Positions 1 to 8,427 of a stretch of DNA of 8,427 nt are shown in pieces (the first letter of the stretch is position 1; each line of letters starts with the position of its first letter). Made by a program: the position numbers and the translations under genes. The notes beneath the pieces are model-generated. The model did not search any database. It worked only from the letters and a program-made list of their open reading frames with translations, and had not been told where the DNA came from. The stretch lies in the IMG/VR virus record IMGVR_UViG_3300005964_000044, positions 1 through 8,427 of that record. One strand, written 5' to 3'.

Positions 1-1
1 T

Positions 2-952
2 GCATATATTCGCTCAACATTTTCGCCAAAATTTTACGCAGTTTTTGGAATTTCACTCTGGCTAATTTATGTATTTTCAGCACCGGTATTAGCTGACCTA
101 GTACTCCTAAATTTCAATATTCCAGCAATTGATAAGTTCTTTATTTCTGAAGTGCTTTTCGCTATTGCTTTGTTCAGTATAGTTAAAAAGTCAATTTATG
201 CATATTTAGTAGACGGAATTGCAATTTTACAAATAATTGTTTCTTTAATTCTGCCAATTTCAAGTTTTCATTTTCAAGTCCAAAATTTCACAATATCAAA
301 TACTTTACTTTCAGCTTTATTATTTGATTTATCCATGTTTTTATTTCTAAATGCAATTAGTTATATTGCAGGAGAAACGAAAAATGTGAATAAAAATATG
401 AAAATTGGTTATTTTGCAAGCTATTTAGTAGTTACCATATTAGCAATATTAGATAGTTATTCAAATCTAAATATATTATTTGTATTAATGCCAATGTGGT
501 TTATGAGTTATATTTTTATCACTTCCATGATACAAAGTCGTTTAGTGCAAAATTTAGCGTTTGATAGAATTCTTCCCGAAAAATTTGCAAAAATAACGCC
601 TAACGTTTTACTATTAATCTTTATTGCTGATACAATTGCAAATATCTTAGAAAATCTACTAAACTTTTCAATTTCCTTTGGCTTTGACGGTCTATTATTT
701 ATTTTCTGGAACTTTATAATTGTTAGTTTTGCATTTCTAAAATTAACAAATAAAAAACTACTATTTTCAATAGTGTTAACTAGTCTAATTTTACAGATCT
801 TCTTATTCTTCTATTTAGGTCTTCAAAATCAAGTATTCTATAACTTTGTAATTGAGGGCAATTTCATATACATAATATTAAGAATATTACTAATGCCAAT
901 TGTTGGAGGAATTATTTACTTATTAAGGAGGAAAATTATAAACGCTGAATAA
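2..952 (+). CDS. APC-superfamily amino-acid permease-like membrane protein (rudiviral ORF399-type), 5'-partial
   Basis: The frame of the listed 152..952 ORF is open back to position 2 (AYIRSTFSPKFYAVFGISLW...), so the gene starts before the window. It has many hydrophobic TM segments. It carries APC-like motifs: AYIR (end of GGxYxY) and SRLVQNLAFDRILPEKF (cf. SRxxxAxAxDGxLPxxF). It lies directly upstream of the TGT-like gene, as recalled for SIRV1/2. Confidence 0.75.
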   Translation, partial: AYIRSTFSPKFYAVFGISLWLIYVFSAPVLADLVLLNFNIPAIDKFFISEVLFAIALFSIVKKSIYAYLVDGIAILQIIVSLILPISSFHFQVQNFTISNTLLSALLFDLSMFLFLNAISYIAGETKNVNKNMKIGYFASYLVVTILAILDSYSNLNILFVLMPMWFMSYIFITSMIQSRLVQNLAFDRILPEKFAKITPNVLLLIFIADTIANILENLLNFSISFGFDGLLFIFWNFIIVSFAFLKLTNKKLLFSIVLTSLILQIFLFFYLGLQNQVFYNFVIEGNFIYIILRILLMPIVGGIIYLLRRKIINAE

Positions 953-954
953 AG

Positions 955-1878
955 ATGAAGTTGATTTTTGGCATTTCTAGTTCAAGAAGTTATTTTTTTA
1001 AAACGAATTTTCCAGTTCTAATTAATCAGCTGAGATTTAAAAGAAAAACATGGAAAAATGAGACTTGGATAGACAGTGGAGGCTATCAAATTATACTTCA
1101 CGGTCTAGAAATTTCGCCACAAGAAATAGTACAAAAATATAAAAGCATAGATGCTTATGCATTTTTTTCTCTTGATATTCCTAGCGTTTTTTCGCCAATT
1201 GATAAACGAAATTTTGAATATTTCGAATATCTATATACCAAAATTGAGTATATAGAAAAAATTATACCAGTTTTACATATTTATCCACTTCAAGAACTAG
1301 ATGAAGCTATTGATTTTTATAAACAATATACTTATTATTTCGCAATTGGCGGAATTGTAGCTTCTAGTAAAATGAAAGTTTTAATTTATACATTTCCATG
1401 GATATTTTATGTAAGAAAAAAAGTTCCGTATCTTCACGTTTTAGGAATGTCAGCTCCATATTTTTTACAAATTTTTAATTTTGTTGAAAGCATGGACACA
1501 GCAACTCATAGCGTAACAACTTCATTCAGGGAGATCTTTTGGTTTGATGGTTCTAGAAAATACGTAGGCAAAAGAAAAGCTAAAAGAATGAATGAGGAGG
1601 AAAAAGAGCAATTATTTGAATTCTTAGATAAGCATAATTTTCCATTTGAATATGATTTAAACAATAGGCATATTTTAGAACTAATAAACGCTTATATTCT
1701 ATTGTATCATAATTGGAAAATTAAGAATAAGTATACTGAATATGCTGATAAATTAAGAAAAATGGGATTAGATAGTTTGACAATTGAGTTAATTAGAAAT
1801 TACAAAATTGGAACAGAATTGCTAAAAGAGAAAAAGAATAAAAAGAAAGAAGAAGATGAATTAGAACTTGAGATATAA
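955..1878 (+). CDS. Queuine/archaeosine tRNA-guanine transglycosylase-like (TGT/DpdA-like) protein, rudiviral ORF306/310-type
   Basis: TGT barrel motifs appear in order: WIDSGGYQI, LDIP, IPVLH, AIGG, LHVLG, SMDT (nucleophile Asp position). There is no Cys-based Zn site. ATG is 2 nt after the transporter stop. Confidence 0.85.
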   Translation: MKLIFGISSSRSYFFKTNFPVLINQLRFKRKTWKNETWIDSGGYQIILHGLEISPQEIVQKYKSIDAYAFFSLDIPSVFSPIDKRNFEYFEYLYTKIEYIEKIIPVLHIYPLQELDEAIDFYKQYTYYFAIGGIVASSKMKVLIYTFPWIFYVRKKVPYLHVLGMSAPYFLQIFNFVESMDTATHSVTTSFREIFWFDGSRKYVGKRKAKRMNEEEKEQLFEFLDKHNFPFEYDLNNRHILELINAYILLYHNWKIKNKYTEYADKLRKMGLDSLTIELIRNYKIGTELLKEKKNKKKEEDELELEI

Positions 1879-1923
1879 AAAAGAATTAAATCTTTACATT
1901 TTTAGATTTATTTTATAACATCC

Positions 1924-1951
1924 TAATTTTTTAATGTCATAATTTTAACTT
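1924..1951 (+). promoter_or_regulatory. Rudiviral TATA-like + GTC promoter for the 236-aa gene
   Basis: TAATTTTTTAATGTCATAATTTTAACTT lies just upstream of ATG 1965. A GTC just downstream of a TATA-like box is a known rudiviral promoter trait. A near copy precedes the convergent 64-aa gene. Confidence 0.5.
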
Positions 1952-1964
1952 TACTTGATCTAAA

Positions 1965-2675
1965 ATGAGGAAGATATACGCAAATGTAAAACAAATTAGA
2001 GTTAGTACGTCTATACCACAAAATGCAAATCTTCTATGGCAAAATGACAAATTAGCACTATATTATACCTATGATCCTTCTCAAGGAAGAGTGGATTGGA
2101 TTATGCAAAATAATACAAATTCTTCTATATTAGTGTCATTATTAAGAGGTGCTGAATTAAACATTAATGGACAGACTTATACAATTCCAGATTATCTATT
2201 TGGAAATGCTTTTGCTGAAGTTTATTTTGCAAACAATTTGTCTAATTTTATAACCGACTTGAACAATATTCCACTTTATTCATTAGCAATTGTAAATAAT
2301 AATAATGGAGTTAGAACTATAGCTTTTGTCTTTCAAATTCCACCAAATTCAGTAATTATAGCTCCAGAATATGGATTTAATGGTTTACAAAACATAGACG
2401 GTCAATTATTAGAAGCAAATCCGATAAATCAAAATCTATTTGGAATAATTTACGATTTTAGCGAAATTATTGAGTATGAATATCAGACCGGAATTAACGT
2501 GAACTATCCTCCAGATCCATATATAGTTCAAAGTTATCAATTTCTAATTGATAATTTAGGACAAATTATGACTCAAAGACTGATATTGGAAATACCAGAA
2601 AGCGATATAAATACTGTAAAATCCTTAGTTTCAGATTTTCAAAAAGTAATAGATAAATTGAAGAAAATATTTTAA
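1965..2675 (+). CDS. Hypothetical protein (236 aa, Asn/Ile-rich, probably beta-rich, with C-terminal amphipathic helix)
   Basis: Long ORF with its own promoter-like motif, followed by a T-rich tract (2683-2698). No family recognised. Confidence 0.8.
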   Translation: MRKIYANVKQIRVSTSIPQNANLLWQNDKLALYYTYDPSQGRVDWIMQNNTNSSILVSLLRGAELNINGQTYTIPDYLFGNAFAEVYFANNLSNFITDLNNIPLYSLAIVNNNNGVRTIAFVFQIPPNSVIIAPEYGFNGLQNIDGQLLEANPINQNLFGIIYDFSEIIEYEYQTGINVNYPPDPYIVQSYQFLIDNLGQIMTQRLILEIPESDINTVKSLVSDFQKVIDKLKKIF

Positions 2676-2697
2676 GTTCTATTATTTTTTTATTTTT

Positions 2698-2892
2698 TCA
2701 ATGATGAAAACAGTGTGACCACAGATCTACAAAAATTCCAGTTATAATTATCAATTGAAAAACTATGATCAGTTTCAAGATTTCATTATGAACTGAGAAA
2801 TAGAGAATAAAAGATAGAATAAAGAGAATTATCAGACCATATAAATCATGAGTTTTTCCGCTTAAAAAATAATGAAACATGTTACAACTCAT
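2698..2892 (-). CDS. Small membrane protein (~64 aa, two TM helices), probably leaderless
   Basis: The listed start at 2970 overlaps the upstream gene. The minus-strand motif TAATTTTTTAATTGTCATTTTTCAACTT (2926-2899) points to ATG 2892 (MSCNMFHY...). The protein has two hydrophobic segments. Confidence 0.6.
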   Translation of the reverse strand: MSCNMFHYFLSGKTHDLYGLIILFILSFILYFSVHNEILKLIIVFQLIIITGIFVDLWSHCFHH

Positions 2893-2927
2893 AAATTTAA
2901 GTTGAAAAATGACAATTAAAAAATTAC

Positions 2928-3233
2928 TTAATAATATGTTTTCCAAATTAACAAAGCTATTAAATACCATAATTGTTCTTTTGGTATTTCGGCAAATATA
3001 CCGTTTTTAGCAAATTTATACGCATTATAAAGTCCTTCTATTTCATGTGTTATGTCTTCAATTTTCCATTTTTCAGGTTCCATAATTCCATTTTTTGTTT
3101 TAATTTCAATTGATGTTTTCATGTCCTTTATCCGTATTTTTAATTTATTATATTCATTATTTCCTTTCTTAACTTTTACTAATTGCATAGAAAAATTTAA
3201 TTCTAAATCCTTTACAACTTCTTCTTCTGTCAT
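2928..3233 (-). CDS. Hypothetical protein (~101 aa), candidate early/anti-defence gene
   Basis: Downstream of class-I promoter copy 1. ATG 3257 is too close to the TATA box to be transcribed. ATG 3233 (MTEEEV) has GGAGA upstream. Confidence 0.75.
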   Translation of the reverse strand: MTEEEVVKDLELNFSMQLVKVKKGNNEYNKLKIRIKDMKTSIEIKTKNGIMEPEKWKIEDITHEIEGLYNAYKFAKNGIFAEIPKEQLWYLIALLIWKTYY

Positions 3234-3263
3234 TTTTTCATCTCCATAAAAAAGCATATAATT

Positions 3264-3299
3264 TATGACAAATTTAAAAATGTCTCAAGTTTTTGATTT
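3264..3299 (-). promoter_or_regulatory. Class-I repeated early promoter, copy 1
   Basis: + strand tatgacaaatttaaaaatgtctcaagtttttgattt; the minus strand reads TTTAAA box then TTTGTCATA. Confidence 0.85.
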
Positions 3300-3360
3300 T
3301 CAAAATAATAAGTTAAGAAAAAGAAAAAAATTATAGATAAAAAACGATTAATTTAAAACT

Positions 3361-4083
3361 TTAATCAGCTTTATGACTTCTTGGCTTTGGATGCGTAATT
3401 AAATAATATTTATTTCCGCTTAGCATAACTGAATTTTCGCCATGATCCGGCGATTTCATAACAAATGTTGTAGAATTTTGAAGATATACTAAAAACGTAG
3501 AACCAGGCGTTGAAAATAAATCAGTAGCTAATACAGTATTTGAAAATTGTATTTCATGGTTGTAAATCGTTAGACTGTTTACATGATTTAAACTAAGATT
3601 TAAGTCATTATTTGGCGGTGGAACTTCATAGATTTCCAAATTTCCTTGATTAAACGTTAGATTAAATTGATATAGTTGACCTTTTACAAATATATCGTAA
3701 ATTTCTATTGAATAATTGCTATAACTAATAAGTAATTCTTTAGAACTAAGATTTAAAAGTTCTAGTTCTTTTAATATAATGTTTTTCATATCCTCTAAAC
3801 TTCTTGTAATTTTATTTCTTCTGTAAACTGATAGTATAGATGGTGCAGGTATGTAATATATACCTTTAGTTTCATCTAATTGACCATCAACATTTCTAAA
3901 ACATCCATTAAATGTTAGTCCTGACCTTGAAACATATTTTGAGCAATTTACATAATGATTTGAAATTAATGAAATTTTGGTAACTTGACCATTCATATGT
4001 TTTAACATAAAAACTTGTGGCAAATGAATTATTTGTTTTAAAATTTTAACTTCATACTTTTTTTGATCTTCAACTTGGGACAT
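3361..4083 (-). CDS. acrIIIB1: Anti-CRISPR AcrIIIB1 homolog (SIRV2 gp48-like; inhibitor of type III-B Cmr)
   Basis: Co-linear similarity to the recalled AcrIIIB1 sequence along its length: EVKxxKxxxxLPxVF, VNCxxYxSRSGxTxxGC, GIY, YSNYxIEIYDIxxKGxxYxFxL, QGxLxxYxVPxP, IYNH, TPG, SxDH, C-terminal HPxPR. The size (~240 aa) fits. Likely start is ATG 4083 after SD GGTG; GTG 4095 is the alternative. Confidence 0.9.
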   Translation of the reverse strand: MSQVEDQKKYEVKILKQIIHLPQVFMLKHMNGQVTKISLISNHYVNCSKYVSRSGLTFNGCFRNVDGQLDETKGIYYIPAPSILSVYRRNKITRSLEDMKNIILKELELLNLSSKELLISYSNYSIEIYDIFVKGQLYQFNLTFNQGNLEIYEVPPPNNDLNLSLNHVNSLTIYNHEIQFSNTVLATDLFSTPGSTFLVYLQNSTTFVMKSPDHGENSVMLSGNKYYLITHPKPRSHKAD

Positions 4084-4115
4084 ACGACCTGACACCTGTA
4101 AATGAAAATATGCTA

Positions 4116-4151
4116 TATGACAAATATAAAGTATTCGAAAAGTCTTGATTT
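4116..4151 (-). promoter_or_regulatory. Class-I repeated early promoter, copy 2 (acrIIIB1 promoter)
   Basis: tatgacaaatataaagtattcgaaaagtcttgattt, in the same 36-nt register as the other copies; it is the most diverged copy. Confidence 0.8.
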
Positions 4152-4169
4152 AAAAAAATATAAAAAGAA

Positions 4170-4454
4170 TTATTTTTCATAATATTCTATTGTAATTCTA
4201 TCAATTGGAAAATCATATCCTGTTATCATCTCTAAAGTTCTTTTTGGTTCCTTAACTAGTAAGCAAAATAATTCATCTAGATTTTGAACTCCAAAATCTT
4301 CATAAGTACTGCCACTAATATCTTTAACTTCTCTATTAATTTCAAAATCAATTAAACAATATTTACCTTCATAATCTGTAATAAAATAACTTTCTTCCTC
4401 AGATAAAACAATTCTAAAACCATAATTATATTTTTCAACTATTATATCAACCAT
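4170..4454 (-). CDS. Small acidic hypothetical protein (94 aa), candidate anti-defence protein
   Basis: SD GGTGA 8 nt before ATG. It starts 16 nt after the upstream stop, suggesting an operon. Very D/E/Y-rich and immediately upstream of acrIIIB1. Confidence 0.8.
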   Translation of the reverse strand: MVDIIVEKYNYGFRIVLSEEESYFITDYEGKYCLIDFEINREVKDISGSTYEDFGVQNLDELFCLLVKEPKRTLEMITGYDFPIDRITIEYYEK

Positions 4455-4470
4455 TTTTCCTTCACCTTGT

Positions 4471-4767
4471 TCAACAATTTATTATCCAATCTTTATTTCC
4501 ATATTTCTCTTCAAATTCTTTTATTTTTCTTTGTTTTAGTAATTTTATAATTTCTTTAACTTCTTCTTCAGAAATTTTCAGGCAATCCCTTCCATTATAA
4601 TGGCTAATTGTAATAGTAGACGTAACTTTGTCACGATATACTTTTTCAACTTCAACATAATATTCACCATCTTTTTTCACGATATAATAATAATAATCTT
4701 CAAACTTAGTTCCTACTTTTTTAGCGTAAATTATTTTTCTATTTTCTTGACTTGAACTTCCTGACAT
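4471..4767 (-). CDS. Small hypothetical protein (~98 aa), candidate anti-defence protein
   Basis: Downstream of promoter copy 3. The leader TTTACAGGTGAtggaatatATG mirrors the acrIIIB1 leader TTTACAGGTGtcaggtcgtATG, so the start is probably 4767 rather than GTG 4779. Confidence 0.8.
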   Translation of the reverse strand: MSGSSSQENRKIIYAKKVGTKFEDYYYYIVKKDGEYYVEVEKVYRDKVTSTITISHYNGRDCLKISEEEVKEIIKLLKQRKIKEFEEKYGNKDWIINC

Positions 4768-4799
4768 ATATTCCATCACCTGTAAAACGATTTATTCAT

Positions 4800-4835
4800 T
4801 ATGACAAATATAAAAATATCTTGAACTTTCGATTT
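4800..4835 (-). promoter_or_regulatory. Class-I repeated early promoter, copy 3
   Basis: tatgacaaatataaaaatatcttgaactttcgattt. Confidence 0.85.
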
Positions 4836-4856
4836 ATAAAAAAGAAAAAAATAATA

Positions 4857-5321
4857 TTAATTTTTGACAAATTCGATTTTATAATTTTTCTTTAAGAGAT
4901 AATACACTTTGAAATAGACAGGATCGGCATGACTGATAATAGATTCTGGTATCATCTTCAGTAAAGTAATAATATCTTCTGGAACATTATATTCATCACC
5001 ATAATATATGATTATTTTATTTTCTTTAACTTCAAACCTATGCCAAGAATATGCTTTTTTATAATCTATAATATAATTATGAGAACCATTATTCCATTCA
5101 TCATATGCTATATACTTTATATTATCATTATAAATAAAAATTACAGAACTAACATATCTATCATTTACGGTATTTCTTAATTTTTCAAATAGATATTCCT
5201 TTAACTCTTTATAATTTATTTTCTGCACTTCATCCCATAGCTGAATAATTTCATATCTTAAAATCTCTAATTGATTTATTATTTGATTTATTTTCTCTAA
5301 TTGTTGATCAAATCCACTCAT
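4857..5321 (-). CDS. Hypothetical protein (154 aa, N-terminal coiled coil), paralog A
   Basis: SD GGTGA before ATG and promoter copy 4 upstream. Visibly homologous to the 5496-5969 product. Confidence 0.85.
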   Translation of the reverse strand: MSGFDQQLEKINQIINQLEILRYEIIQLWDEVQKINYKELKEYLFEKLRNTVNDRYVSSVIFIYNDNIKYIAYDEWNNGSHNYIIDYKKAYSWHRFEVKENKIIIYYGDEYNVPEDIITLLKMIPESIISHADPVYFKVYYLLKKNYKIEFVKN

Positions 5322-5351
5322 CTTTACTTTTCACCAAATCAATTTACGTTA

Positions 5352-5387
5352 TATGACAAATTTAAAAATGTCTTTAGTTTTCGATTT
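5352..5387 (-). promoter_or_regulatory. Class-I repeated early promoter, copy 4
   Basis: tatgacaaatttaaaaatgtctttagttttcgattt. Confidence 0.85.
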
Positions 5388-5429
5388 ATCGATTTTTTTA
5401 AAAAATAGAATTATTATTTCAGATGTGAA

Positions 5430-5482
5430 AAAAATTATTGAAAAAAATAGAAGATAATGAACATGAAAATAGGAAGTTAAAA
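5430..5482. repeat. 53-bp exact direct repeat, copy 1 (terminator-like on the minus strand)
   Basis: aaaaattattgaaaaaaatagaagataatgaacatgaaaataggaagttaaaa is identical to 6078-6130. Confidence 0.95.
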
Positions 5483-5495
5483 AAGAAAGAAAAAA

Positions 5496-5969
5496 TTATT
5501 TTTGAACTTTAATGAAATTTATTTTATATCCTTTTTTCAATAGTAAATATAATCTCACAAATCCTTCATATGCCCAGCCAAGATTTGATTCTTTCATTAT
5601 TTTTAATAAATTCAATAAGTTATCTGAAAGATCATATTCCGAAAGATACATAAGATTTATAGTATATTTATCAGCATCAACATCATATCTATCCCAATAA
5701 TATATTTTATTCTTTATGATAAGTAAATTTCTTGAACCACTATGTTTTGGTTTAGATATATATTTTACATCATTATCATTCACAAAAATAACGCTATTTA
5801 CATCATTAACATTTGTAATTTCAAATAAATTATCAAAAAAATGTTTTATATCTTCCTCGTATATTGTTTCTGATATTTGTTTTTGTAACCTTTCTACTTC
5901 TTGTTTTAAATGTTCTAAACCATTAATTATTTCATCTATTTTTTCTAATTCAACTTTATTTTTATCCAT
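5496..5969 (-). CDS. Hypothetical protein (~157 aa, N-terminal coiled coil), paralog B
   Basis: The listed GTG at 5981 is part of the SD (GGTGAaagaaaaaATG), so the start is ATG 5969. Promoter copy 5 is upstream. Confidence 0.85.
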   Translation of the reverse strand: MDKNKVELEKIDEIINGLEHLKQEVERLQKQISETIYEEDIKHFFDNLFEITNVNDVNSVIFVNDNDVKYISKPKHSGSRNLLIIKNKIYYWDRYDVDADKYTINLMYLSEYDLSDNLLNLLKIMKESNLGWAYEGFVRLYLLLKKGYKINFIKVQK

Positions 5970-5999
5970 TTTTTCTTTCACCTAAAACAACATGTACTA

Positions 6000-6035
6000 T
6001 ATGACAAATTTAAAAATGTCTTTAGTTTTCGCTTT
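6000..6035 (-). promoter_or_regulatory. Class-I repeated early promoter, copy 5
   Basis: tatgacaaatttaaaaatgtctttagttttcgcttt; 5998-6031 is identical to 5350-5383. Confidence 0.85.
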
Positions 6036-6077
6036 ACGAATTTCCTAAAATGTTAGTATTAATATTTGAAACATGAG

Positions 6078-6130
6078 AAAAATTATTGAAAAAAATAGAA
6101 GATAATGAACATGAAAATAGGAAGTTAAAA
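6078..6130. repeat. 53-bp exact direct repeat, copy 2
   Basis: Identical to 5430-5482 at an offset of 648 bp, the same offset as promoter copies 4 and 5. Confidence 0.95.
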
Positions 6131-6178
6131 TATAAAATTATAAAAATAAAATAAAATTAAGGAAAAAAGATAAAAAAA

Positions 6179-6406
6179 TTATTGAGTTTGTTGAAATTGA
6201 ATTTGTTTTTGAACTAATGAATTGAATGTTTTAAAAGCGTATTCATAATCATAACCATGATAATAGAAATAACGGTTTGTTAATGATATTTTGAAAACTG
6301 CATAACGAGAATTTTGACAGCAAACACATTTCGCTAATACAACATTTCCAACTTGTTTTACTGTTTGAAATTCGTGATACCTTATCCCTATAACTTGAAA
6401 TCTCAT
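6179..6406 (-). CDS. Small hypothetical protein (~75 aa, CVCC motif)
   Basis: Class-II promoter upstream, AGGT before ATG 6406, and a long T-rich tract after the stop. Confidence 0.7.
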   Translation of the reverse strand: MRFQVIGIRYHEFQTVKQVGNVVLAKCVCCQNSRYAVFKISLTNRYFYYHGYDYEYAFKTFNSLVQKQIQFQQTQ

Positions 6407-6432
6407 ACCTATCAATTATATATATGTAAAAA

Positions 6433-6453
6433 CTTATATTTAAACTTTTCTCT
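6433..6453 (-). promoter_or_regulatory. Class-II promoter (BRE+TATA), copy 1
   Basis: Minus strand AGAGAAAAGTTTAAATATAAG; 21 bp identical to 6959-6979. Confidence 0.85.
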
Positions 6454-6541
6454 ATCTTTTTACCTTTTCATTTTTCGATTTCTTTAACGCTAAACATGTT
6501 AACTCTCAATTTGTGCATATCTTGAATTTATATTTAAAAAC

Positions 6542-6598
6542 TGAGAAAAATTAGACATAAAGATAGATAATAAGAAGAATGAAACTAAAAAGCTAAAA
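6542..6598. repeat. Diverged third copy of the intergenic 53-bp block
   Basis: 42/57 identical, ungapped, to 6074-6130 by manual alignment. A-richness inflates the identity. Confidence 0.55.
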
Positions 6599-6670
6599 GA
6601 TAAAGTTAGAAAAATAAAAATGAACTAACAAAGAGAAAAAAACGTTAACTTAATACAAATAAAAAAATTA

Positions 6671-6931
6671 TTAAGATTTAGGAAGTAATAGATAAACGTT
6701 ATCGCCTGCATTTATTTTCACAATAAAATTCTGCTTTAACCATGAAATATATTTTAAACCACAACCAGGTATTGGATTGTAGAAACATGTTGTTGAAACC
6801 TCATGCCATTCGTAATGTGGACAATCCTGAATTATCATTCCGCCTCCAACATCATATTTTTCCCCCAATCTAACATTACAATTTGAACAATAATATGTAG
6901 TAACATTTCCTTCTATTTCTCTTTTCAACAT
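6671..6931 (-). CDS. Small Cys-rich, putative zinc-binding protein (~86 aa)
   Basis: CSNC...CPH...C...C pattern. The listed 5' extension overlaps the promoter; SD GGTGA precedes ATG 6931. Confidence 0.75.
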   Translation of the reverse strand: MLKREIEGNVTTYYCSNCNVRLGEKYDVGGGMIIQDCPHYEWHEVSTTCFYNPIPGCGLKYISWLKQNFIVKINAGDNVYLLLPKS

Positions 6932-6958
6932 CTTTTCACCAATATACATATCACATTC

Positions 6959-6979
6959 CTTATATTTAAACTTTTCTCT
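6959..6979 (-). promoter_or_regulatory. Class-II promoter (BRE+TATA), copy 2
   Basis: Identical to 6433-6453. Confidence 0.85.
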
Positions 6980-7195
6980 CAATTTTTACATCTCTATCTT
7001 TCGCTCCTATTCTGCTAATTATCAATATAATGTATATGCCAAATCTGCTTCATGAATATTTTAACTTCCTAATTGCTTAATTTCATAATATACTAATCAT
7101 ATAATATGCTATCTTCTCAATTGCATAATTTCATAATTTATTAATTCTCCTTACAATTTCCTCCATAAAATACTGAGATAAATTCAAACTGTATA

Positions 7196-7276
7196 CAGCA
7201 TCTTCTGTTGAATTGAAAGAAAAAAAGAAACTATATCTCCGTGATAAGTCTCAAATAATTGACTAAAAATTCAAGG
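7196..7276 (+). CRISPR. Possible solitary or degenerate CRISPR repeat unit(s)
   Basis: CAGCATCTTCTGTTGAATTGAAAG (7196-7219): the last 20 nt match the recalled Sulfolobales repeat (...ATCTACTATAGAATTGAAAG) at 17/20. A much weaker repeat-like string lies 34 nt later at 7254-7276. Confidence 0.3.
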
Positions 7277-7660
7277 AAAATTTATGAATATACTAACTTC
7301 ACAATTACATAATTATATAATTATATATAACATAAAACATTTTATTATTTTAACTCTCAAACACGCAATTTTATAATTTTTAAGCTTCTCAACTTCCAAA
7401 GTTTTTAATTTATAAATTCACGTTTAGTTTTTCCACGCGACCAGCTTCCAAATCCAAAACTTTGTGAAAACAAGAACTTGGAACTGGAAAACTAAAGTCG
7501 CGGGTAAAAACGTAATTATATAATTAAAAAATTTGGGAATTGAGAAACTAAAGAATTATAAAATTTGCTAATTTGAAAAATAAAAAATAATAAAAAATAA
7601 AAATAAATAAAAATGGAGAACAGTCTACTCACTAATTCTATCAACTTTTGGCTCTTCAAG

Positions 7661-7676
7661 TATTTAAACTTTTCTC
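7661..7676 (-). promoter_or_regulatory. Class-II promoter core, copy 3 (no convincing gene downstream)
   Basis: GAGAAAAGTTTAAATA, 16 bp identical to copies 1 and 2. Confidence 0.6.
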
Positions 7677-7740
7677 CAAACTTTGAATTCTGATCAAACA
7701 AACTCCAAAAAATCCAACTGAATATAATATAATAATTTTG

Positions 7741-7884
7741 GAATATGTTTAGTAACTTTTTAACTTTAAATTGAGGTTTTGGTTTGCTAGAATTAATAAT
7801 TTAAATAAATTATGAATATGTTTAGTAACTAAAAACTTTAAATTGGAGTTTTGGTTGCCTCAGATTTATAAATTATAATATTAT
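7741..7884. repeat. Two-copy imperfect tandem repeat, period 73 bp
   Basis: gaatatgtttagtaact...aactttaaattg..gttttggtt at 7741 and 7814. Confidence 0.85.
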
Positions 7885-7971
7885 AGTTAGTAGTTATTAA
7901 TATCCACAAATTAACATTTATTACAAATTTCCAAAGTTTGAATTTGCAAATTTTATATTACAAATTTCACC

Positions 7972-8363
7972 AAATGACAGATTAATTGTAATTTAGGAAT
8001 TTAGAAAATTAGTATTTTTTATCATAGTTGTAAAATTATTTGGAAATGTAGAATTAATTGGAATTTAGGAATTTCCAATTTTTTAACTTTTTTGCAGAAA
8101 ATGATAGATTATTTCAAATTTAGGAAATTAGGAATTTACAATTTTTCTCATTTTTTGCACAATTTACGCAAAATGACAGATTAATTGGAATTTTGGAATT
8201 TTCAATTTTTTGCACCGCTCCAATTATTATTTGGAGGTGTAGAATTAATTGGAATTTCCAATTTATTGCGAAAGTTGGGAAATTTGCGAAAAAAACGAAA
8301 AAAACGAAAGAAATTGGAATTTTCAATTTTTTGCATTAGTTGTGAAATTTTCGCAGAAAATGA
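7972..8363. repeat. Rudiviral terminal (ITR) repeat region with AATTTAGG-type motifs
   Basis: 8117-8137 matches the conserved rudiviral terminal 21-mer AATTTAGGAATTTAGGAATTT at 20/21, and 7990-8010 at 19/21. Recurrent blocks: aaatgacagattaattg (7972, 8171), tgtagaattaattggaattt (8047, 8238), ttggaattttcaattttttgca (8193, 8314). Confidence 0.8.
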
Positions 8364-8427
8364 AAAAAACTACAGTTCCCTAATTAAGCCTTTGCAATTG
8401 CAGAATATTAACTAGGTATTTGATGTA

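What the first reader, a model, noticed from the sequence alone, without database searches (positions are those of the whole stretch)
7196..7276. CRISPR-repeat mimic in the non-coding end: candidate RNA anti-CRISPR (Racr/SRU) or decayed mini-array
Seen: ATCTTCTGTTGAATTGAAAG ends in the exact 8-nt crRNA 5' tag ATTGAAAG (7212-7219). It is followed by a 34-nt spacer-length stretch (aaaaaaagaaactatatctccgtgataagtctca) and a degenerate repeat-like string (aataattgactaaaaattcaagg; 17/24 with one gap versus GATAATCTACTATAGAATTGAAAG). Known: solitary repeat units act as RNA anti-CRISPRs in bacterial MGEs, and some Sulfolobales viruses carry mini-arrays. Inference: Cas6 could process this into a decoy or anti-competitor crRNA next to a protein Acr island. 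Caveats: the background is AT-rich and I see no clear + strand promoter.
Basis: partly seen in the sequence, partly recalled or inferred. Interest (0 to 1): 0.65.

Follow-up and report, generated by a model that had tools for sequence, protein, structure and literature searches.

The report
Lone CRISPR-repeat look-alike in viral end
The non-coding end of this Yellowstone Sulfolobus rod-shaped virus carries a strongly conserved 29-base element whose first part imitates the host's CRISPR repeat; it is not a working mini-array, and is more likely a landing site for the host's repeat-binding protein Cbp1 than a proven RNA anti-CRISPR.

Summary
The sequence facts are correct, but the exact 8-nt tag alone is at chance level (1 found, 1.29 expected).

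**Match to the host repeat.** The 24-mer at 7196-7219 matches the local host repeat GCTAATCTACTATAGAATTGAAAG at 17/24. That repeat occurs in an array from the same metagenome whose spacers hit SIRV8 and SIRV10. The window's match is marginal (shuffle p 0.30 by identity, 0.035 by log-odds). The commonest related copy (SIRV10 type) matches 19/24, p 0.006 per genome.

**Conservation.** The element sits in the inverted terminal repeat of a subset of Yellowstone rudiviruses, at both genome ends, pointing outward. A 29-nt core (7208-7236) is nearly invariant even where the flanks are unalignable. It crosses the proposed repeat/spacer border, so the "34-nt spacer" is not a spacer. It has no target, and the second "repeat" is not significant alone.

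**Reading.**
- All eight bases shown by mutation to matter for the host repeat-binding protein Cbp1 are kept.
- A validated lone Cbp1 site in a transposon is less repeat-like than this element.
- I therefore favour a DNA-level Cbp1 docking site (confidence 0.4).
- An RNA decoy (0.2) and a virus-own element that resembles the repeat by coincidence (0.3) are not excluded.

This is a new member of a known kind; interest is moderate.

The parts
7196..7219 (+). R1, the solitary CRISPR-repeat-like unit CAGCATCTTCTGTTGAATTGAAAG
   Evidence: It matches the host repeat GCTAATCTACTATAGAATTGAAAG at 17/24 and is the top-scoring site in the window. Related viruses carry nine variants at 15-19/24. Positions 15-24 are invariant.
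7212..7219 (+). ATTGAAAG, identical to the 8-nt crRNA 5' handle
   Evidence: It is the only copy in the window, and 1.29 are expected by chance.
7208..7236 (+). 29-nt nearly invariant core TTGAATTGAAAGAAAAAAAGAAACTATAT
   Evidence: It is identical in SIRV4, SIRV10, SIRV11, several IMG/VR contigs and most of the 22 metagenome loci fetched (two of them the window's own contig and one chance hit). It has 0-4 mismatches in the 'beta' copies, whose flanks are unalignable. In the segment from -10 to +17 the identity to the window is 24-27 of 27, against 9-10 of 36 just upstream in the beta copies.
7220..7253 (+).
   Evidence: Homology to SIRV10, SIRV11 and SIRV4 stops at 7236. No protospacer was found in the phage or plasmid collections, in IMG/VR, or in 272 kb of related loci.
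7254..7276 (+). R2, a weak second repeat-like string (AATAATTGACTAAAAATTCAAGG)
   Evidence: It gives 16-17 identical columns out of 24 with one gap. It is not significant alone. The motif CAAAAATTGAAGG recurs at +57 in L153 copies 1-3, but it is absent from SIRV4, SIRV10 and SIRV11.
7125..7236 (+). 'Alpha' block shared with SIRV4, SIRV10 and SIRV11, lying inside their inverted terminal repeats
   Evidence: Identity is 89-92% and the flanks on both sides cannot be aligned. The block is present at both genome ends and points outward.
7189..7198 (.). 10-bp perfect palindrome CTGTATACAG overlapping the start of R1
   Evidence: Read directly from the sequence. It is intact in all alpha copies except the a5 variant, which has one change.
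7165..7172 (+). TATA-like ATAAAATA, 31 nt upstream of R1
   Evidence: The distance matches the TATA box of the host array leader, which is 32 nt upstream of its first repeat in L140. It has no BRE (the purine-rich element that normally sits upstream of an archaeal TATA box). It is lost in SIRV4, SIRV11, L158 and L161. This is weak evidence in AT-rich DNA.

Best explanation
The finding is the window's copy of a conserved cis element in the inverted terminal repeat of a subset of Yellowstone Sulfolobus rod-shaped viruses. Its 5' part is a solitary, degenerate copy or mimic of the host's 24-nt CRISPR repeat. It is fused to an invariant 17-nt A-rich tail. It is not a repeat-spacer array.

The most likely action is on DNA. 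The unit keeps every base known to be needed by Cbp1, the host's CRISPR-repeat-binding protein. Cbp1, possibly together with Cren7, would therefore dock on each genome end.

**Shown here**
- The sequence itself.
- Its conservation pattern and its position in the terminal repeat.
- Its relation to the host repeat.
- Retention of the Cbp1 determinants.

**Inferred**
- That Cbp1 actually binds.

**Speculative: the consequence of binding**
- It could control a nearby promoter, as Cbp1 does at promoters next to repeats.
- It could soak up Cbp1 on a high-copy viral genome and so lower crRNA production.
For: 1. **The repeat is the right one.** An array from the same metagenome (L140) has 9 copies of GCTAATCTACTATAGAATTGAAAG. 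Two of its 8 spacers match SIRV8 and SIRV10 with 0-1 mismatch. The same repeat is reported for Yellowstone S. islandicus (PMC6452263). It equals the S. solfataricus P2 'F' repeat that Cbp1 binds (PMC10883916).
2. **The Cbp1 determinants are kept.** Double mutations A6/T7, A17/A18, T19/T20 and A22/A23 of the 25-nt repeat reduce Cbp1 binding, and A13/A14 does not. In the 24-nt numbering these are positions 5, 6, 16, 17, 18, 19, 21 and 22. The window copy and 6 other variants keep 8 of 8; the remaining two keep 7 of 8.
3. **Variation falls where Cbp1 is indifferent.** Positions 6, 9 and 15-24 never vary. Positions 4 and 11-14 take 2-3 different bases.
4. **A validated solitary site is less repeat-like.** The Cbp1 site in transposon ISC1229, TAAGATTGCCACGTGAATTGAAAG, is only 13/24 identical to the repeat. 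It shares A5, T6 and TGAATTGAAAG with the viral unit.
5. **Selection is evident.** The core is 24-27 of 27 identical between copies whose flanks are at background identity. It is also kept in both terminal repeats of a 5.3-kb mini-replicon that has no structural genes.
6. **The match is beyond chance in relatives.** The SIRV10-type copy scores p 0.006 per genome.
Against: - There is no binding or expression data for these viruses.
- The window's own copy is only marginally better than chance (p 0.012-0.035; 0.30 by raw identity).
- The invariant block extends 17 nt past the repeat. Reported Cbp1-Cren7 protection reaches only about 6-10 bp into the spacer, so something else constrains that tail.
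- Two variants have C instead of A at position 5.
- GAATTGAAAG alone would arise by chance in a few percent of such genomes. By my estimate from base composition that is about 0.03 per 8.4 kb.
- Icelandic SIRV1 and SIRV2, and Yellowstone SIRV8 and V60, lack the element, so it is not needed by rudiviruses in general.
- The published Cbp1 ChIP on SIRV2-infected cells reports no viral sites, although SIRV2 lacks the element.
Confidence: 0.4

Rival explanations
1. RNA-level mimic. An outward transcript starts just upstream of R1. A host Cas6 cuts it before AUUGAAAG. The resulting handle-bearing RNA loads into type I-A or III-B complexes as a decoy (Racr-like) or as a crRNA-like guide.
For: - The 8-nt handle and the two bases before the cut site are exact and invariant in all copies.
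- The three beta copies keep a perfect 3-bp Cas6 mini-stem through a change on both sides: host U8-A14 becomes A8-U14.
- A TATA-like box lies 31 nt upstream of R1 in most copies. The host leader TATA is at -32.
- There is a precedent. [quoted passage not shown]
- RNA anti-CRISPRs made of solitary repeats exist in phages (PMC10651486).
Against: - No plus-strand promoter is conserved in all copies, and the TATA-like box has no BRE.
- The mini-stem is broken (U-U or U-C) in the window copy and in 4 other alpha variants, 5 of the 6 in all; the a2 variant keeps three pairs through two G-U wobbles.
- Variable positions include the stem partner, position 14.
- The invariant 17-nt tail is not explained by sequence-independent loading.
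- No target exists for any 'spacer' variant.
- No structure or covariation is predicted.
- No Rfam family reached its gathering score in 6900-8427, and none of the ten matches listed at E up to 10 overlaps the element.
Confidence: 0.2
2. A virus-own cis element whose resemblance to the CRISPR repeat is coincidental. It could be a binding site for a viral or host factor, a promoter (A-rich box plus TATAT), a minus-strand T7 terminator, or a replication or packaging signal of the terminal repeat.
For: - The conserved unit (7208-7236) ignores the repeat border.
- The element sits at both genome ends, always pointing outward. In SIRV10 it lies about 0.95 kb from the terminus, in L153 about 0.8 kb (copy 2, from the fold-back) and about 0.9 kb (copy 3, from the contig end), and in the window 1.2 kb from the contig end.
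- It is retained in a mini-replicon that encodes only Rep-like and regulatory proteins.
- ATTGAAAG is common in AT-rich rudiviral DNA, with 11 copies in SIRV8.
- The window copy's match to the repeat is only marginal.
Against: - The full 24-mer match in the commonest variant has p 0.006 or lower per genome.
- Both diverged families keep AATC, then 7 nt, then GAATTGAAAG. That is the spacing of the local host's repeat type.
- A site with these determinants should be bound by Cbp1 whatever its origin.
- Many rudiviruses do without the element.
Confidence: 0.3
3. A decayed relic of a captured repeat-spacer-repeat mini-array that no longer does anything.
For: - R1 (15-19/24) is followed at a fixed +57 nt by a weak R2 (about 15-17/24 with one gap) in the window type and in the beta copies.
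- Virus-borne mini-arrays and stand-alone repeats are documented in Sulfolobales viruses (PMC6858448).
- SPV1-type mini-arrays with nearly the same repeat were recovered here (L139).
Against: - Near-perfect conservation of the 29-nt core among otherwise unalignable copies argues for current function, not neutral decay.
- R2 is not significant alone.
- The interval is 34 nt, against 38-49 nt in real arrays.
- There is no leader similarity to the host array (p 0.05-0.85).
Confidence: 0.1

Closest known systems
Non-canonical (solitary) Cbp1 binding sites in ISC1229 transposons and in CRISPR 3-5 promoters of Saccharolobus (Blombach et al. 2024, PMC10883916)
   Same: - Both are a single repeat-like 21-24 bp site on a mobile element, outside any array.
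- Both share A5, T6 and TGAATTGAAAG.
- In both, the middle of the site is free to vary.
- In both, the function is unknown.
   Different: - This element is in a virus's terminal repeat, not a transposon.
- It is more repeat-like (15-19/24 against 13/24).
- It is welded to an invariant 17-nt tail.
- Binding has not been tested.
Stand-alone CRISPR repeats and mini-arrays of Sulfolobales viruses and plasmids (Medvedeva et al. 2019, PMC6858448)
   Same: - Both are host-type repeats carried by a Sulfolobales virus, with no cas genes and no recognisable leader.
   Different: - The published mini-arrays have near-exact repeats, 38-40-nt spacers and targets in rival viruses.
- Here the unit is degenerate, there is no real spacer, and there is no target.
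- I could not establish whether these SIRVs are among the 'three other archaeal viruses' of that paper's Fig. 5b.
RNA anti-CRISPRs (Racrs), solitary repeat units of phages (Camara-Wilpert et al. 2023, PMC10651486)
   Same: - Both are a solitary repeat mimic on a virus, close to likely anti-defence genes.
   Different: - Racrs are transcribed, closely match the host repeat including its structure, and bind Cas6 and Cas7.
- Here transcription is unshown and the Cas6 mini-stem is broken in most copies.
ncRNA60 of S. solfataricus (Sokolowski et al. 2014, PMC4041471)
   Same: - Both have a degenerate solitary repeat that lacks the mini-stem.
- ncRNA60 shows that Cas6-3 can still process such a unit and that Csm can load the product.
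   Different: - ncRNA60 is host-encoded, next to a cas6 gene.
- Its handle differs from the crRNA handle by two bases, whereas the viral handle is exact.

Membership tests
CRISPR mini-array (repeat-spacer-repeat) | Two or more near-identical direct repeats of host type | tested here: not met
   R1 is 17/24. R2 is 16-17/24 with one gap, and dozens of sites in the window score as well. R2 is absent from SIRV4, SIRV10 and SIRV11.
CRISPR mini-array (repeat-spacer-repeat) | A variable spacer of host-like length with a target, bounded exactly by the repeats | tested here: not met
   The interval is 34 nt, against 39-49 nt in the local array. Its first 17 nt are invariant across viruses. No target was found.
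CRISPR mini-array (repeat-spacer-repeat) | A promoter-bearing leader resembling host leaders | tested here: inconclusive
   Leader alignment to L140 is not significant (p 0.05-0.85). There is a TATA-like box at -31, but it has no BRE and is not conserved in all copies.
Solitary repeat unit / stand-alone CRISPR repeat on a virus | A single unit similar to the repeat of the host's own CRISPR system, beyond chance | tested here: inconclusive
   The window copy gives p 0.012-0.035 by log-odds and 0.30 by identity. The SIRV10-type copy gives p 0.006 or lower per genome. The host repeat was verified in the same metagenome.
RNA anti-CRISPR (Racr) | Transcribed as a small RNA | not testable with these tools
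   No expression data are available. The candidate TATA at 7165-7172 is not conserved in all copies.
RNA anti-CRISPR (Racr) | Keeps the features Cas6 recognises: the 3-bp stem at the cut site and the handle | tested here: inconclusive
   The handle is exact. The stem has 2 of 3 pairs in the window and 4 other alpha variants, 3 of 3 through two G-U wobbles in the a2 variant, and 3 of 3 in the beta copies. Cas6-3 can cut without a stem.
RNA anti-CRISPR (Racr) | Binds Cas proteins and inhibits interference | not testable with these tools
   This needs biochemistry and infection assays.
Non-canonical Cbp1 binding site | Bases whose mutation reduces Cbp1 binding (24-nt numbering: 5, 6, 16-19, 21, 22) | tested here: met
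   The window copy keeps 8 of 8, and all nine variants keep 7-8 of 8. The validated ISC1229 site also keeps 8 of 8.
Non-canonical Cbp1 binding site | Cbp1 occupancy in vivo or binding in vitro | not testable with these tools
   No ChIP or gel-shift data exist for these viruses. The published SIRV2 infection ChIP concerns a virus that lacks the element.

The most novel reading that the evidence does not exclude
The terminal-repeat element is a DNA-based anti-CRISPR. Two Cbp1 sites per genome, multiplied by the viral copy number, would titrate the host's CRISPR-repeat-binding protein away from the arrays. Loss of Cbp1 is known to reduce leader-driven pre-crRNA and to unleash cryptic transcripts (PMC10883916). 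The virus would thereby weaken immunity without encoding any protein or RNA inhibitor.
Probability: 0.12. Interest if true: 0.8.

Novelty: new member of a known kind. Interest (0 to 1): 0.45.

Why it matters
If Cbp1 (or Cas6) really recognises this element, it would be the first case of a Sulfolobus virus carrying a conserved, selected mimic of its host's CRISPR repeat in its genome ends. That would link viral terminal repeats to the host's CRISPR chromatin or crRNA machinery.

It is directly testable. SIRV4, SIRV10 and SIRV11 have the element, SIRV8 lacks it, all are cultured, and genome editing of SIRVs exists.

If the resemblance is coincidental, the 29-nt core is still a new, sharply conserved cis element of rudiviral termini. 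It is shared with a capsid-less mini-replicon, which makes it a good candidate for a replication, packaging or regulatory signal.

Tried and rejected
- **Rfam scan** of 6900-8427 at E up to 10: no family reached its gathering score, and none of the ten weak matches listed overlaps the element.
- **Consensus RNA structure** of diverged copies: 0 pairs. Single-sequence folds of either strand gave z from -1.5 to +1.3.
- **Protospacer search** for the 'spacer':
  - Phage and plasmid collections gave only chance hits with E of 3 or more.
  - An exact 18-mer in IMG/VR hit only the element itself.
  - All six spacer variants, allowing up to 8 mismatches, found nothing in 272 kb of related loci.
- **Leader homology** to the host array: not significant. 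A shared CTTTTTAC-TAAT string between the host leader and the beta copies is not found in SPV1 leaders, so I treated it as chance.
- **Co-variation with host repeat type:** SIRV1 and SIRV2 (Iceland) have no equivalent element.
- **A 15-17-aa micro-ORF** after the core in the beta copies: the differences are mostly at first codon positions, and the alpha copies lack the start or carry a stop (read). Rejected as a gene.
- **Genome-collection scan:** The host repeat therefore came from the literature and from L140.
- **My early impression** that the second repeat is window-specific was wrong. It recurs in window-type and beta copies.
- **Not used:** protein-homology, structure and complex tools were not needed for a non-coding element.

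Full report
**What the window is.** The window is IMG/VR contig IMGVR_UViG_3300005964_000044, and it spans the whole 8427-nt contig. It is the end of a Yellowstone-type Sulfolobus islandicus rod-shaped virus (genus Usarudivirus) with about 25% G+C. Its nearest relatives are SIRV10, SIRV11 and SIRV4. Positions 1-6982 carry genes of rudiviral families. From 6983 to the end there is no convincing gene. The last 700 nt match the terminal repeats of all Yellowstone SIRVs.

**Checking the observation.**
- The exact handle ATTGAAAG is at chance level: 1 was found and 1.29 are expected. SIRV8 has 11 copies.
It is the Mutnovsky A repeat.
- The Yellowstone host repeat is GCTAATCTACTATAGAATTGAAAG (PMC6452263).
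- I recovered that repeat from the same metagenome. L140 is a 9-repeat array with spacers of 39-49 nt, and two of those spacers match SIRV8 and SIRV10 with 0-1 mismatch.
- The same sequence is the S. solfataricus P2 'F' repeat.

**Is the match more than chance?**
- Against the Yellowstone repeat, 7196-7219 scores 17/24 and is the best site in the window.
- That level arises in 30% of dinucleotide shuffles by raw identity and in 3.5% by composition-aware log-odds. Against the Mutnovsky repeat the log-odds figure is 1.2%.
- The second 'repeat' (7254-7276) does give 17/24 with one gap, but 18-100 positions in the window score about as well.

**Conservation changes the picture.**
- Window 7125-7236 is 89-92% identical to SIRV4, SIRV10 and SIRV11, and both flanks are unalignable.
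- In complete genomes the block lies inside the inverted terminal repeat, at both ends, pointing outward. In SIRV10 it sits about 0.95 kb from the true terminus. The SIRV10 record itself reads through the terminal hairpin.
- IMG/VR and metagenome scans gave six 'alpha' variants of the 16 nt before the handle. The commonest is the SIRV10 type, CAGAATCTTCTATTGAATTGAAAG. It is 19/24 to the host repeat, with p 0.006 per 33-kb genome.
- A second, 'beta' family (L160 and L153 copies 2 and 3) has unrelated flanks but the same core, with 0-4 mismatches.
- Measured from the end of the handle, identity between the window and the beta copies is 24-27 of 27 in the segment -10 to +17. It is 9-10 of 36 just upstream and 3-8 of 17 just downstream.
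- The selected unit is therefore about 29 nt, 7208-7236: TTGAATTGAAAGAAAAAAAGAAACTATAT. It straddles the supposed repeat/spacer border.
- The window-type downstream sequence, including an AAAAATTGAAGG-like box at +57, is shared with L135, other contigs and the beta copies. It has been replaced in SIRV4, SIRV10 and SIRV11.

**Not a mini-array.**
- The interval is shorter than every spacer of the local array.
- Half of it is invariant between viruses.
- None of six 'spacer' variants has a target in the phage or plasmid collections, in IMG/VR, or in 272 kb of related rudiviral DNA.
- The upstream region does not resemble the host leader.
- A capture of repeat-spacer-repeat in the distant past cannot be excluded as the origin. 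R1 together with a positioned R2 is jointly less likely by chance than either alone. It is not a working array now.

**What the repeat-like part preserves.** Among nine viral variants, positions 15-24 (GAATTGAAAG), T6 and T9 never vary. AATC at positions 4-7 is kept in the commonest alpha type, in the a4 variant and in all beta copies, with the same 7-nt spacing as the host repeat. Positions 4 and 11-14 take two or three bases.

Two host factors read this repeat family.

*Cas6 (acts on RNA).*
- Cas6 uses a 3-bp stem (6-16, 7-15, 8-14) at the cut site (PMC4041471).
- The window copy and four other alpha variants have only two of the three pairs; the a2 variant reaches three through two G-U wobbles.
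- The beta copies have all three, through a change on both sides (U8-A14 becomes A8-U14).

*Cbp1 (acts on DNA).*
- Double mutations at A6/T7, A17/A18, T19/T20 and A22/A23 of the 25-nt repeat reduce binding. A13/A14 does not (PMC10883916).
- In 24-nt numbering these eight bases are all present in the window copy. In the other variants 7-8 are present.
- Cbp1 also binds solitary sites on mobile elements. Its validated ISC1229 site, TAAGATTGCCACGTGAATTGAAAG, is only 13/24 identical to the F repeat. It shares A5, T6 and TGAATTGAAAG with the viral unit.
- The viral unit is thus more repeat-like than a site known to be strongly occupied.

**Mechanism.** I favour a DNA-level reading: each genome end carries a docking site for Cbp1, possibly with Cren7.
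- The sequence determinants and the conservation pattern are shown.
- Binding is inferred.
- The consequence is speculative. Cbp1 silences promoters that overlap or adjoin its sites and aids elongation. It could therefore gate transcription next to the element, whose invariant tail looks like an A-rich box plus TATAT.
- Alternatively, many viral copies could titrate Cbp1 and depress crRNA production.
- The 17-nt tail is not explained by Cbp1, so a second factor, viral or host, probably reads it.

**Rivals.**
- The RNA decoy idea keeps real support: the exact handle and cut-site bases, the beta mini-stem, a TATA-like box 31 nt upstream (the host leader's is at -32), and the ncRNA60 precedent.
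- It lacks a conserved promoter and has a broken stem in the window copy.
- It also shows no RNA structure signal.
- A virus-own cis element with a coincidental resemblance also remains plausible. The core ignores the repeat border, and it is retained in the terminal repeats of a capsid-less mini-replicon.
- SIRV1, SIRV2, SIRV8 and isolate V60 lack the element.

**Comparison with the known, and verdict.** The known relatives are these:
- stand-alone host-type repeats in Sulfolobales viruses (PMC6858448);
- solitary repeat units and RNA anti-CRISPRs in phages (PMC10651486);
- solitary Cbp1 sites on transposons (PMC10883916).

This is a new member of that general kind. It is unusual for its place in the terminal repeat, its sharp conservation and its fused tail. 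The mini-array reading is not supported. The anti-CRISPR RNA reading is possible but not the best fit. Interest is moderate, because the window's own statistical support is marginal and nothing is known about expression or binding.

Noticed in passing
L153 (Ga0080003_1002852) 2190-7472: A zero-spacer fold-back at 2189/2190 joins two different rudiviral termini. The right part looks like a complete linear mini-replicon of about 5.3 kb with terminal repeats of about 1 kb. It encodes two Rep-like PF21578 paralogues, a ribbon-helix-helix protein, a C2H2 zinc finger and an Aca8/ORF56-like HTH protein, and has no capsid gene. It may be a satellite or a defective rudivirus. Both of its terminal repeats carry the core element.
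   Followed up: partly
L140 (IMGVR_UViG_3300005964_000047) 2037-2590: A contig from the same metagenome, classed as viral, carries a 9-repeat CRISPR array of the host type with a leader TATA at -32. Spacers 1 and 8 match SIRV10 and SIRV8. It sits beside a PHA01746-like gene (PF21017). Whether it belongs to the host or to a mobile element is unresolved.
   Followed up: partly
window 7355-7575: An imperfect palindrome of about 210 nt (arms 7367-7410 and 7522-7565, 86% complementary) around a G+C-richer centre. The DNA fold is -43 kcal/mol with z = -8.6. It lies in a terminal-repeat segment (7237-7719) that SIRV4, SIRV10 and SIRV11 lack. Its function is unknown, and it could be an insertion.
   Followed up: partly
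window 3248-3301, 4100-4153, 4784-4837, 5336-5389, 5984-6037: A motif of 54-90 nt (core TATGACAAATTTAAAAATGTCT) is repeated upstream of five minus-strand small genes. These include the paralogues 4857-5321 and 5496-5981 (phrog_12890).
   Followed up: no
window 6437-6467, 6963-6993, 7661-7691: A promoter-like motif (minus strand GAGAAAAGTTTAAATA) precedes the two last minus-strand genes. A third copy occurs in the gene-free terminal repeat, followed at once by T-runs and no ORF. It may be the remnant of a lost first gene.
   Followed up: no
window 4898-4921; SIRV8 (L134) 34335-34358: This is among the next-best matches to the CRISPR repeat. GATAATACACTTTGAAATAGACAG is 17/24 to the Mutnovsky repeat, and the SIRV8 homologue is 19/24 (p 0.013). 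It matches the 5' half only, lacks the handle, and lies antisense inside a phrog_12890 gene. It is probably chance.
   Followed up: no
SIRV10 GenBank record KY744230.1 (L133) 1-594: Nucleotides 1-297 are the reverse complement of 298-594 (97%). The deposited 'partial genome' therefore reads through the terminal hairpin, and the true left terminus is near position 298.
   Followed up: no
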